Assembly: GCF_039654945.1 (NCBI RefSeq)
Contig: NW_027362019.1
Coordinates: 744,001-808,000, forward strand
Direction: 5' to 3'
Origin: Dendrobates tinctorius
Taxonomy: Eukaryota
Length of the DNA stretch: 64,000 bases
In this document: piece by piece, positions 36,401 through 39,400 of the stretch
Layout of the letters: each line of letters starts with the position of its first letter
Numbering within the stretch: position 1 is the stretch's first letter
The notes under the pieces: model-generated
The model's input: the letters and a program-made list of their open reading frames with translations, nothing else
What the model was told of the DNA's origin: nothing
Databases searched by the model: none
Made by a program: the position numbers and the translations under genes

Positions 36401-39400
36401 GTGGGATGTGCGGTTACCACCATCTCCTCCAACCTTACGGAGATGTCCCGGGGTGTGAAGCTTCTGGCTGCTCTTATGGAAGATGAAGGTGGGAACGGTA
36501 GACAGCTTCTCCATGCGGCCAAGAACCTGGCTGGAGCCGTGTCTGAGCTTCTGAAGACTGCCCAGCCTGCAAGCACCGAGGTGTGTATAGTGTGCGACTC
36601 TTCGATCATGCACTAGAAAACTTTGTCCCACATTGATTCTGTGTCTCTTTTGTGTTCTAAGCCAAGACAGGTCCTTCTTCAGGCAGCAGGAAATGTCGGT
36701 CAGACGAGTGGAGAATTGCTTCAACAGATTGGGGAGTGTGACACTGACCCACGGTTCCAGGTAAGCATGAGTTTCTCAAGGTTTATTTTGTTGCCTACTT
36801 CTAATCACTTATTTCCTATGACTACCCCCTCTCTTGACTTGCTATTTTTCATTACTTTTCTCTCTCCTCTCAATATAGATTTAGATTTTCCTTGTCTTAA
36901 TTATCCTGTATAAAAAGATTATCCCCATGTCCTCTCCTCTTCCTGTAGCTGTAGATTATCCCTGTGTCCTCTCCTCTTCCTATAGACGTAGATTATCCCC
37001 GTGTCCTCTCCTCTTCCTCTAGATGTAGATTATCCCCGGGACCTCTCCTCTTCCTCTAGATGTAGATTATCCCCGTGTCCTCTCCTCTTCCTGTAGCTGT
37101 AGATTATCCCTGTGTCCTCTCCTCTTCCTATAGACGTAGATTATCCCCGTGTCCTCTCCTCTTCCTATAGACGTAGATTATCCCCGTGTCCTCTCCTCTT
37201 CCTCTAGATGTAGATTATCCCCGTGTCCTCTCCTCTTCCTCTAGATGTAGATTATCCCCGTGTCCTCTCCTCTTCCTCTAGATGTAGATTATCCCCGTGT
37301 CCTCTCCTCTTCCTCTAGATTTAGATTATCCCCGTGTCCTCTCCTCTTCCTCTAGATGTAGATTATCCCTGTGTCCTCTCCTCTTCCTGTAGATTATCCC
37401 CGTGTCCTCTCCTCTTCCTCTAGGTGTAGATTATCCCTGTGTCCTCTCCTCTTCCTCCTTATAGTCTATTGTCCCTGTGGCTCCTCCTCTTCCTCCTTCC
37501 TGTCTATTGTCCCTGTGGCTCCTCCTCTTCCTCATTCCTGTCTATTGTCCCTGTGGCTCCTCCTCTTCCTCCTTCCTGTATATTGTCCCTGTGGCTCCTC
37601 CTCTTCCTCATTCCTGTCTATTGTCCCTGTGGCTCCTCCTTTTCCTCCTTCCTGTATATTGTCCCTGTGGCTCCTCCTCTTCCTCATTCCTGTCTATTGT
37701 CCCTGTGGCTCCTCCTTTTCCTCCTTCCTGTCTATTGTCCCTGTGGCTCCTCCTCTTCCTCATTCCTGTCTATTGTCCCTGTGGCTCCTCCTCTTCCTCA
37801 TTCCTGTCTATTGTCCCTGTGGCTCTTCCTCCTTCCTGTATATTGTCCCTGTGGCTCCTCCTCTTCCTCATTCCGGTCTATTGTCCCTGTGGCTCCTCCT
37901 TTTCCTCCTTCCTGTCTATTGTCCCTGTGGCTCTTCCTCCTTCCTGTTTGTTGTCCCTGTGGCTCTTCCTCTTCCTCCTTATAGTCTATTGTCCCTGTGG
38001 CTCCTCCTCTTCTTCCTTCCTGTCTATTGTCCCTGTGGCTCCTCCTCTTCCTCCTTCCTGTATATTGTCCCTGTGGCTCCTCCTCTTCCTCATTCCTGTC
38101 TATTGTCCCTGTGGCTCCTCCTTTTCCTCATTCCTGTCTATTGTCCCTGTGGCTCCTCCTCTTCCTCATTCCTGTCTATTGTCCCTGTGGCTCCTCCTCT
38201 TCCTCCTTCCTGTCTATTGTCCCTGTGGCTCCTCCTCTTCCTCATTCCTGTCTATTGTCCCTGTGGCTCCTCCTCTTCCTCATTCCTGTCTATTGTCCCT
38301 GTGGCTCCTCCTCTTCCTCATTCCTGTCTATTGTCCCTGTGGCTCCTCCTTTTCCTCATTCCTGTCTATTGTCCCTGTGGCTCCTCCTCTTCCTCCTTAT
38401 TGTCTATTGTCCCTGTGGTTGCTCCTTTTCTCTTTCTCCCTTTATGAGCACCTCTATGCATGGACCATGTCTTTATCTGGACCTGCTCTTGTTTGGGAGG
38501 CCCTCCCCTCCATTGGTGTCTATGTACATAATGTGCCCTCTCTATCCGCTTCCTCCACTTGTTGTTCTTCTTCTGTGTGCTCGTTTTTGGGTTCTTGTCC
38601 ACATTTCCACTTTTGTGGGTTCCCACAGATGTCGGCCGGCAGAGCCACTCGCACTCTCACCTCAGTGTCAGATCAGAAGACGGTAACACGAGTATTGTTA
38701 TATGTTCTGTAGCTTTCTGGTGTGGGCTCTTGGTTTTTGTGATTGAAGGGTTAATCTGGAATCTTCTTTAATAATTTGATTATTTTAATCATTTTTCCTG
38801 ATTTCGGGCTCATTCTGCTGCTTGACTGTGGCTCTCTGCCGCTGGTGCTCTGAGGTTCTCCGCCTGGTTTCTCACCATAGTTGGTGTGTGTTTTGCATTC
38901 ACACTTGTCTTTGAAATATCTAAGTTTTATAGACCCTATTAATAAGTTCTTTGTTCTCAGAGGGGTCCTCCGTGCTGGGTGCAGAGCGTGCGTATAGGGC
39001 TGCAGAGCGCGGAGTGCGTATAGGGCTGCAGAGCGCGGAGTGCGTATAGGGCTGCAGAGCGCGGAGTGCGTATAGGGCTGCAGAGCGCGGAGTGCGTATA
39101 GGGCTGCAGAGCGCGGAGTGCGTATAGGGCTGCAGAGCGCGGAGTGCGTATAGGGCTGCAGAGCGCGGAGTGCGTATAGGGCTGCAGAGCGCGGAGTGCG
39201 TATAGGGCTGCAGAGCGCGGAGTGCGTATAGGGCTGCAGAGCGCGGAGTGCGTATAGGGCTGCAGAGCGCGGAGTGCGTATAGGGCTGCAGAGCGCGGAG
39301 TGCGTATAGGGCTGCAGAGCGCGGAGTGCGTATAGGGCTGCAGAGCGCGGAGTGCGTATAGGGCTGCAGAGCGCGGAGTGCGTATAGGGCTGCAGAGCGC

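What the first reader, a model, noticed from the sequence alone, without database searches (positions are those of the whole stretch)
38629..38682. Candidate 54-nt cassette exon at the R1-R2 junction, equivalent in position to human TLN1 exon 17b
Seen: a T-rich tract and ttcccacag| acceptor, an 18-codon stop-free frame ([18 protein letters not shown]) and a |gtaaca donor. It is phase 0/0 like the flanking exons and sits in a short unique-sequence island between two minisatellites. If the missing first coding exon is 130 nt as in human, the upstream exon ends exactly at codon 665 (DPRFQ). Established (from memory): human TLN1 has a 51-nt alternative exon inserting 17 residues after Gln665 that changes R1-R2 mechanics and vinculin binding. 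Inference: an amphibian counterpart would make this splice switch at least tetrapod-wide.
Basis: partly seen in the sequence, partly recalled or inferred. Interest (0 to 1): 0.8.

Follow-up and report, generated by a model that had tools for sequence, protein, structure and literature searches.

The report
Frog talin-1 exon 17b counterpart
The 54-base block is a real, alternatively used mini-exon of a poison frog's talin-1 gene; it sits where the human "exon 17b" sits and is conserved from frogs to birds and a primate, so this splice switch in a key force-sensing protein looks ancient.

Summary
Observation confirmed and interpretation supported. The window carries talin-1 (TLN1) of a dendrobatid (poison) frog. 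The exons either side of the candidate align to human talin-1 residues 633-665 and 666-719, so the 6.3-kb intron is the counterpart of human intron 17.

Sequence alone is not beyond chance. All three frames are open there, the splice sites are weak, and six equal-or-better in-frame pseudo-exons lie in the same intron.

Public RNA-type contigs settle it. One run that matches the window exactly holds a 113-base contig joining exon 17, 38629-38682 and exon 18 (depth 39), beside the 59-base skipping contig (depth 15). A run of a sister taxon shows the same donor spliced to exon 18.

The exon and its splice sites are conserved:
- Ranitomeya: 53/54 bases, with 45 upstream bases identical, against about 84-90% in the surrounding intron.
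- Eleutherodactylus coqui: annotated as an isoform.
- Ascaphus: present as a 51-base exon.
- Three birds and a tamarin: a 51-base block with the same TTCC..AG|AT...ACG|GTAA frame.
- Otophysan fishes: a 60-base exon annotated at the same junction.

AlphaFold predicts a largely disordered insert between R1 and R2. I did not see the human exon's letters, and function is inferred from the human study. The scan has not reported this exon before.

The parts
38629..38682 (+). Alternative cassette exon ('17b'), 54 nt, phase 0/0, encodes [18 protein letters not shown], inserted between talin-1 Gln665 and Asp666 equivalents
   Evidence: Sequence. Contig of run X1 joins 36760->38629 and 38682->exon 18. 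53/54 identical in Ranitomeya, the one change synonymous. Homologous exons in E. coqui and Ascaphus.
38584..38628 (+). Acceptor region: pyrimidine tract, ttcccacag acceptor and the upstream motif TTGTGGGTTCC (38613-38623)
   Evidence: 45/45 identical to Ranitomeya against about 84-90% in the surrounding intron. CTTGTGGATTCC is shared by Ascaphus and three birds. GT..AG joint 36757->38626 (cut +3) in X1.
38683..38715 (+). Weak donor gtaaca and conserved downstream intron flank
   Evidence: ACG|GTAA is invariant in the frogs, birds and tamarin examined; the catfish has CTG|GTAACA. Spliced from 38682 to exon 18 in X1 and X7. 33 nt identical to Ranitomeya.
36662..36760 (+). Constitutive upstream exon (human exon 17 equivalent), ends ...CDTDPRFQ = Gln665
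   Evidence: phmmer to 6R9T residues 633-665. In mRNA-type contigs of X6, X7 and X13, and in the junction contigs of X1.
43056..43223 (+). Constitutive downstream exon (human exon 18 equivalent), starts DMLMQLAK = Asp666
   Evidence: phmmer to 6R9T residues 666-719. The loose-end letters of the contigs match uniquely at 43057.
36916..38430 (.). Intronic minisatellites (37/38-nt units) upstream of the unique island; context only
   Evidence: Tandem Repeats Finder
38988..41062 (.). Intronic 26-nt minisatellite (76 copies) downstream of the island; context only, with no counterpart in the Ranitomeya intron

Best explanation
38629-38682 is a genuine, regulated cassette exon of a dendrobatid frog's talin-1 gene, and most likely the ortholog of mammalian TLN1 exon 17b. 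When the weak acceptor (ttcccacag) and weak donor (ACG|gtaaca) are used, 18 residues are inserted between Gln665 and Asp666, at the start of the first helix of rod domain R2. When they are skipped, the canonical talin-1 is made. Inferred mechanism, by analogy with the human isoform: the insert lengthens the short R1-R2 linker with a mostly disordered peptide and loosens the side-by-side packing of R1 and R2. That would lower the force needed to unfold them and expose vinculin-binding sites more readily. Shown here: position, splicing at both junctions, co-existence with the skipped form, and conservation of the exon and its splice sites. Inferred: orthology to the human exon, and the mechanical and cellular effect.
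For: 1. Position. The flanking exons align to human talin-1 residues 633-665 and 666-719. Human exon 17b inserts 17 residues after Gln665 (PMC9997659).

2. Expression. Run X1 (0 mismatches to the window) has a 113-nt contig, depth 39.4, made of the last 30 nt of exon 17, the 54 nt, and 29 nt of exon 18. It also has a 59-nt skip contig, depth 15.2. Both lengths equal those computed for the two paths. Run X7 (sister taxon, about 97-99% identical) has a 340-nt contig, depth 7.8, running 38369-38682 and then spliced to exon 18.

3. Conservation.
- Ranitomeya imitator: 53/54, the one change synonymous, with 45 nt upstream identical. Other intron pieces are about 84-90% identical and the neighbouring constitutive exons about 94%.
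- E. coqui: annotated isoform with insert MAAARATRPTVSEQRT, plus the skip isoform.
- Ascaphus truei: 51-nt ISAARATRTVIPSEQRT with ccccag| and ACG|gtaaca, 627 nt before exon 18.
- Phaethon, Grus and Saguinus: 51-nt in-frame blocks with the same borders.
- Turkey, which was not used to derive the pattern: it matches once, at the first exon of a gene model that splices this block to exon 18.
- The pattern TTCC-N(1-5)-AGAT-N(40-50)-ACGGTAA occurs once in the 64-kb window (0 in 100 shuffles) and once in each tetrapod locus, always in intron 17.

4. Structure. An AlphaFold2 model of the E. coqui inclusion isoform has mean pLDDT 84.5. Residues 156-172 (the linker and the first nine residues of the insert) are below 50. 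The last six insert residues extend R2 helix 1. This agrees with the human model described.
Against: - Only one of four runs laid shows the complete inclusion path. The three runs of the sister taxon show skipping as the main contig.
- All runs are Logan contigs whose RNA nature is a guess by the tool, and tissue is unknown. Contig depth is only a rough measure of inclusion.
- The peptide is poorly conserved outside frogs: 5/17 identical between Ascaphus and the tamarin.
- I never saw the human exon's sequence, so orthology to it rests on position, size, phase and the tamarin and bird blocks.
- No functional data exist for any non-human species.
Confidence: 0.8

Rival explanations
1. It is a real frog cassette exon that arose independently of the mammalian exon 17b. 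On this view the same intron and phase were hit by convergent exonisation, so the switch is not tetrapod-wide by descent.
For: The insert peptides of frogs, birds and tamarin share few residues. The shared pattern was derived post hoc from the same loci.
Against: All tetrapods examined share the same length class (51 nt in Ascaphus, birds and tamarin, as published for human), the same phase, AG|AT at the start, ACG|GTAA at the end and TTCC upstream. The 12-nt motif CTTGTGGATTCC is identical in Ascaphus and birds. An independent species, turkey, fits the pattern at the expected place.
Confidence: 0.12
2. It is splicing noise: a pseudo-exon used now and then because it happens to have AG and GT sites, with no selected function.
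For: The splice sites are weak, and there are many comparable pseudo-exons in the intron. All frames are open, so stop-freeness means nothing. Three of four runs show only skipping as the main form.
Against: In run X1 the inclusion contig is deeper than the skip contig, 39.4 against 15.2. The exon plus acceptor region is 98/99 identical between two dendrobatid genera, against about 84-90% in the surrounding intron and 94% in the constitutive exons. The exon stays in frame at 48, 51 or 54 nt with identical donor letters across frogs, including Ascaphus.
Confidence: 0.05
3. It is an artefact. The spliced contigs would come from DNA (a processed TLN1 retrocopy) or from mis-assembly of short contigs, not from mRNA.
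For: The tool labels the runs 'RNA? (a guess: may be DNA)'.
Against: The runs hold the exons but almost none of the intron. Their contig sets are only 45-240 Mb, and both spliced paths occur with exact GT..AG borders. The E. coqui annotation carries both isoforms independently.
Confidence: 0.03

Closest known systems
Human TLN1 exon 17b (Gallego-Paez et al., J Cell Biol 2023, PMC9997659)
   Same: Both lie in the same intron, between the exons ending at Gln665 and starting at Asp666. Both are in-frame mini-exons of phase 0/0, 51 nt in human and 54 nt here (51 nt in Ascaphus, birds and tamarin). Both are cassette exons, with inclusion and skipping forms present. The insert is predicted to be largely disordered at the R1-R2 linker in both.
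   Different: The frog peptide ([18 protein letters not shown]) is one residue longer. Its similarity to the primate block (ICAPRGAGVRSPPDSPT in the tamarin) is low. Regulation (TGF-beta/SMAD3, epithelial state), the mechanical effect and vinculin binding are known only for human.
Annotated talin-1 isoforms of otophysan fishes with a 20-residue insert (Salminus brasiliensis isoforms X2/X5/X6; Tachysurus vachellii Q7C36_020177)
   Same: The insert lies at the same junction (...QFQ|insert|DMLM...). The fish have a 60-nt phase 0/0 exon with a GTAACA donor, as in frogs. The N-terminal S-x-G-R-x-S/T and the GGCAGAG nucleotides are shared with the dendrobatid exon.
   Different: The fish exon is longer, lacks the AT start and the ACG end, and has a different C-terminal half. 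It does not match the tetrapod pattern. Orthology is only suggestive.
Conserved regulated micro- and mini-exons with weak splice sites and conserved intron flanks (general class)
   Same: The exon is short and frame-preserving. Its splice sites are weak but conserved. The flanking intron is more conserved than the constitutive exons. The insert is a disordered, surface-exposed peptide.
   Different: No regulator was identified here. UGGUG-type motifs downstream are only noted in passing.

Membership tests
TLN1 exon 17b-type cassette exon (R1-R2 junction) | Lies in the intron between the exon ending at Gln665 and the exon starting at Asp666 of talin-1 | tested here: met
   The flanking exons align to 6R9T residues 633-665 and 666-719. 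The gene is talin-1, not talin-2, by its closest homologs.
TLN1 exon 17b-type cassette exon (R1-R2 junction) | Short in-frame exon (51 nt in human), phase 0/0, no stop codon | tested here: met
   54 nt, 18 codons, no stop. 48 nt in E. coqui; 51 nt in Ascaphus, birds and tamarin.
TLN1 exon 17b-type cassette exon (R1-R2 junction) | Both inclusion junctions and the skipping junction occur in transcripts | tested here: met
   Run X1 holds an inclusion contig of 113 nt (depth 39.4) and a skip contig of 59 nt (depth 15.2). X7 shows the donor joined to exon 18. X6 and X13 show skipping. These are contigs, not raw reads, and the RNA nature of the runs is a guess by the tool.
TLN1 exon 17b-type cassette exon (R1-R2 junction) | Sequence orthology with the human exon and its splice sites | tested here: inconclusive
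   The human letters are not in the paper's text, and no supplement is held. Indirect evidence is a tamarin 51-nt block with the same borders as the frog and bird blocks.
TLN1 exon 17b-type cassette exon (R1-R2 junction) | Insert is a mostly unstructured extension of the R1-R2 linker at the start of R2 helix 1 | tested here: met
   AlphaFold2 model of the E. coqui inclusion isoform: pLDDT is below 50 for residues 156-172, and helix 174-206 begins within the last insert residues. This is a prediction only.
TLN1 exon 17b-type cassette exon (R1-R2 junction) | Lowers R1/R2 unfolding force and raises vinculin binding | not testable with these tools
   Known for human only (PMC9997659).
TLN1 exon 17b-type cassette exon (R1-R2 junction) | Inclusion regulated by cell state (TGF-beta/SMAD3; tissue-specific) | not tested
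   Run metadata are coded. Inclusion differs between runs, but tissue is unknown.

The most novel reading that the evidence does not exclude
The R1-R2 mini-exon of talin-1 is an ancient switch of bony vertebrates, more than 400 million years old and present from otophysan fishes through frogs and birds to primates. What is conserved is its splice signals (a deliberately weak GTAA[C/A] donor and a TTCC..AG acceptor context), its frame and its length of about 17-20 residues, not its peptide. That would mean selection acts on a regulated change of linker length, and so of talin mechanosensitivity, rather than on a binding motif.
Probability: 0.5. Interest if true: 0.65.

Novelty: new member of a known kind. 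Interest (0 to 1): 0.58.

Why it matters
Talin-1 was long thought to be a single isoform. Exon 17b was described only in 2023, in human tumours and tissues, and the paper's text says nothing about other species (0 hits for 'conserv', 'species', 'Xenopus' or 'zebrafish').

A frog counterpart that is really spliced in, and whose splice sites are kept from Ascaphus to birds and a primate, argues that the isoform is an old physiological switch and not a cancer-associated oddity. It also makes the switch testable in amphibian, bird and possibly fish models, through developmental and tissue-specific splicing, deletion of the exon, and force spectroscopy of R1R2 with natural inserts of different sequence but similar length.

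Tried and rejected
- **Read laying on 36600-42599.** As the tool suggested, I laid the part beside it (36480-38985). Exon 18 itself could therefore not be in the stretch, and its junction is read from the loose-end letters, which match uniquely at 43057.
- **Big protein search with exon 19.** It gave mostly fragments and no full-length tetrapod talin-1. The word search needs a query of comparable length, so full-length tetrapod isoforms, including the human one, could not be listed. The fish-based search returned only teleosts.
- **Human exon sequence.** It was not found in the paper text, supplements, other papers or PDB chains.
- **Locus look-ups.** The E. coqui and Salminus loci could not be fetched because the exact products are not on record.
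- **Stop-free frame as evidence.** I rejected it because all three frames are open there.
- **Gene-model inserts at the same junction.** I rejected the 86-residue insert of the Ranitomeya model, which is reverse-transcriptase-like. I also rejected the 42-residue insert of the tamarin model, which maps to L005:8194-8319, elsewhere in the intron. Neither is related to this exon.
- **Repeat origin.** A transposon or repeat origin of the island is not supported, since it has no other copy in the window.

Full report
**1. What is in the window**

The + strand carries talin-1 from about 11935 to beyond 54600. tblastn of talin proteins tiles the exons in order. The nearest public protein (P0001, Ranitomeya imitator) is 100% identical over several exons. 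Unique intron sequence is 84-90% identical to the Ranitomeya locus L001, so the window comes from another dendrobatid. Earlier notes of this scan also call this genome a poison frog.

Exon 36662-36760 (PRQVLL...CDTDPRFQ) aligns to human talin-1 (6R9T) residues 633-665. Exon 43056-43223 (DMLMQLAK...) aligns to residues 666-719. The 6,295-nt intron between them is therefore the counterpart of human intron 17. That intron holds exon 17b, a 51-nt cassette inserting 17 residues after Gln665 (PMC9997659).

**2. The observation**

The block sits in a unique island, 38431-38987, between minisatellite arrays.

On its own this is weak evidence:
- All three frames are open across the block, and its own frame is open for 415 codons.
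- With a rough splice-site matrix written from memory, the acceptor scores 1.9 and the donor 0.6, below or at the bottom of three real exons.
- Six other in-frame stop-free AG..GT blocks in the same intron do as well or better, out of 666 with any AG..GT.

**3. Expression**

The run search returned 23 runs, kept as Logan contigs, whose share of words fits mRNA.

- **Run X1** (organism A, no mismatch to the window) has two short contigs that are the two paths of a splice bubble.
  - A 113-nt contig, depth 39.4, covers 36731-36760, jumps with GT..AG ends to 38629-38682, and continues with 28 letters that occur only once in the window, at 43057, the second base of exon 18.
  - A 59-nt contig, depth 15.2, goes from 36760 straight into the same letters.
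  - The computed lengths of the inclusion and skipping paths, with the 30 nt of exon 17 and 29 nt of exon 18 that the contigs carry, are exactly 113 and 59.
  - Taken at face value the depths give about 70% inclusion in that run. This is a rough figure.
- **Run X7** (organism B, 1 mismatch per exon piece and about 97% identity in the intron) has the skip form as its main contig (depth 91). It also has a 340-nt contig (depth 7.8) that runs through 38369-38682 and is then spliced to exon 18. The donor is therefore used in the sister taxon too, here with the upstream intron still present.
- **Runs X6 and X13** show only skipping.

The runs hold almost no intron sequence, so DNA or a retrocopy is an unlikely source.

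**4. Conservation in frogs**

| Species | Locus or protein | Finding |
|---|---|---|
| Ranitomeya imitator | L001:36371-36424 | 53/54 identical, the one change GCC>GCA (synonymous); both splice sites identical |
| Eleutherodactylus coqui | P0270 and P0271 | One partial gene has two products: one with MAAARATRPTVSEQRT between ...DPRFQ and DMLMQLAK, and one without |
| Ascaphus truei | L002:9320-9370 | Best tblastn hit of the 18-residue peptide in a 78-kb locus, 627 nt upstream of exon 18: ttccccccag\|ATT...ACG\|gtaaca, 51 nt, ISAARATRTVIPSEQRT |

In Ranitomeya the 45 nt upstream and 33 nt downstream of the exon are also identical. Other unique intron pieces are 84-90% identical, and the two constitutive neighbour exons are 94%.

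Ascaphus belongs to the earliest-branching living frog lineage (my own knowledge). It shares 15 consecutive nucleotides, CAGAGCCACTCGCAC, with the dendrobatids.

**5. Beyond frogs**

I scanned intron 17 of two birds for in-frame AG..GT blocks and ranked them by similarity to the frog peptides. The same 51-nt block came top in both:
- Phaethon L003:12209-12259, IPESRRAWILPTSDPKT.
- Grus L004:6458-6508.

The peptide score itself is not significant, but the flanks are telling. CTTGTGGATTCC upstream is identical to Ascaphus, and the block begins AG|AT and ends ACG|GTAA.

A tamarin (Saguinus, L005:7936-7986, ICAPRGAGVRSPPDSPT) has a 51-nt block with the same borders.

The pattern TTCC-N(1-5)-AGAT-N(40-50)-ACGGTAA occurs once in the window (0 in 100 shuffles) and once in each of these loci, always at this place. 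That pattern was derived from these same sequences. The independent check is turkey, which was fetched afterwards:
- Turkey matches once, at L007:2990-3055.
- An NCBI model (P0390, [25 protein letters not shown]...) starts exactly at this block and splices it to exon 18.

In fishes, NCBI isoforms of Salminus and a Tachysurus protein carry SLGRGSFRHTRRIHHYSQM[ML] at the same junction. The catfish exon is 60 nt, lies 85 nt after exon 17, and has a GTAACA donor and the letters GGCAGAG, as in the dendrobatid exon. The frog exon ranks first of 310 (window) and first of 125 (Ascaphus) in-frame blocks for likeness to the fish peptide, but with low scores. I call fish orthology suggestive only.

**6. 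Mechanism**

An AlphaFold2 model of the E. coqui inclusion isoform (47-row alignment, mean pLDDT 84.5, pTM 0.82) ends the last R1 helix at residue 153. Confidence is below 50 for residues 156-172, which cover the linker and the first nine residues of the insert. R2 helix 1 starts at residue 174, inside the last insert residues. This matches the human R1R2-17b model described in the paper: an unstructured, surface-exposed linker extension.

By analogy the frog insert should relax the tight R1-R2 coupling, lower unfolding forces and favour vinculin binding. This step is inferred, not shown.

Across tetrapods the peptide keeps little beyond:
- its length;
- an Ile or Met at the start;
- an Arg at position 5 (not in Grus);
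- an acidic residue four from the end, and a final Thr.

The splice-site letters, by contrast, are invariant. That fits selection on regulated inclusion and linker length rather than on a binding motif.

**7. Verdict**

The kind of element is known (human exon 17b). This is a new member that extends it to amphibians, with sequence evidence for birds and a primate and a possible fish counterpart. Database annotations already carry such isoforms for E. coqui, turkey and two fishes. I found no paper that discusses conservation of this exon.

Limits of the evidence:
- contigs instead of raw reads;
- unknown tissues;
- complete inclusion seen in one run only;
- the human exon's letters not seen;
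- no functional test.

Noticed in passing
L001 (Ranitomeya imitator), protein P0001 residues 462-547: The public Ranitomeya gene model inserts 86 residues of CR1/LINE reverse-transcriptase-like sequence between Gln665 and Asp666, instead of the conserved 54-nt exon. This is probably an annotation error or an exonised repeat in that intron.
   Followed up: partly
window 38369-38682, run X7: In the sister taxon a contig keeps the intron upstream of the mini-exon but is already spliced from its donor to exon 18. This suggests the downstream half of intron 17 is removed first.
   Followed up: no
window 38718-38726; L002 about 9434-9440; L003 about 12284-12290: CUGGUG or UGGUGG motifs lie 25-65 nt downstream of the exon in frogs and in two of the three birds. 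All three birds also have GCAUG at +18. These resemble binding motifs of epithelial or RBFOX-type splicing regulators (from memory). I ran no statistics on them.
   Followed up: partly
window 38988-41062 vs L001 about 36707-36733: The 2-kb, 26-nt minisatellite of the window has no counterpart in the Ranitomeya intron. The minisatellite content of this intron therefore turns over quickly around a strongly conserved island.
   Followed up: partly
L007 (turkey, GCA_000146605.4) 3001-4695: The mini-exon plus exon 18 are annotated as a separate 91-residue 'talin-1-like' gene lying upstream of the start of another long talin model. This looks like a local assembly or annotation disorder.
   Followed up: no
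L005 (Saguinus oedipus) 8194-8319: The tamarin gene model inserts 42 residues from a different part of intron 17, just before exon 18. It is unrelated to the conserved 51-nt block at 7936-7986.
   Followed up: partly
Proteins P0221, P0226, P0228, P0230 (Cyprinus carpio): Carp talin-1 models show 4-6 extra residues (CCLTE, VNPRATS) at the same junction. These are possibly alternative splice-site use or model errors.
   Followed up: no
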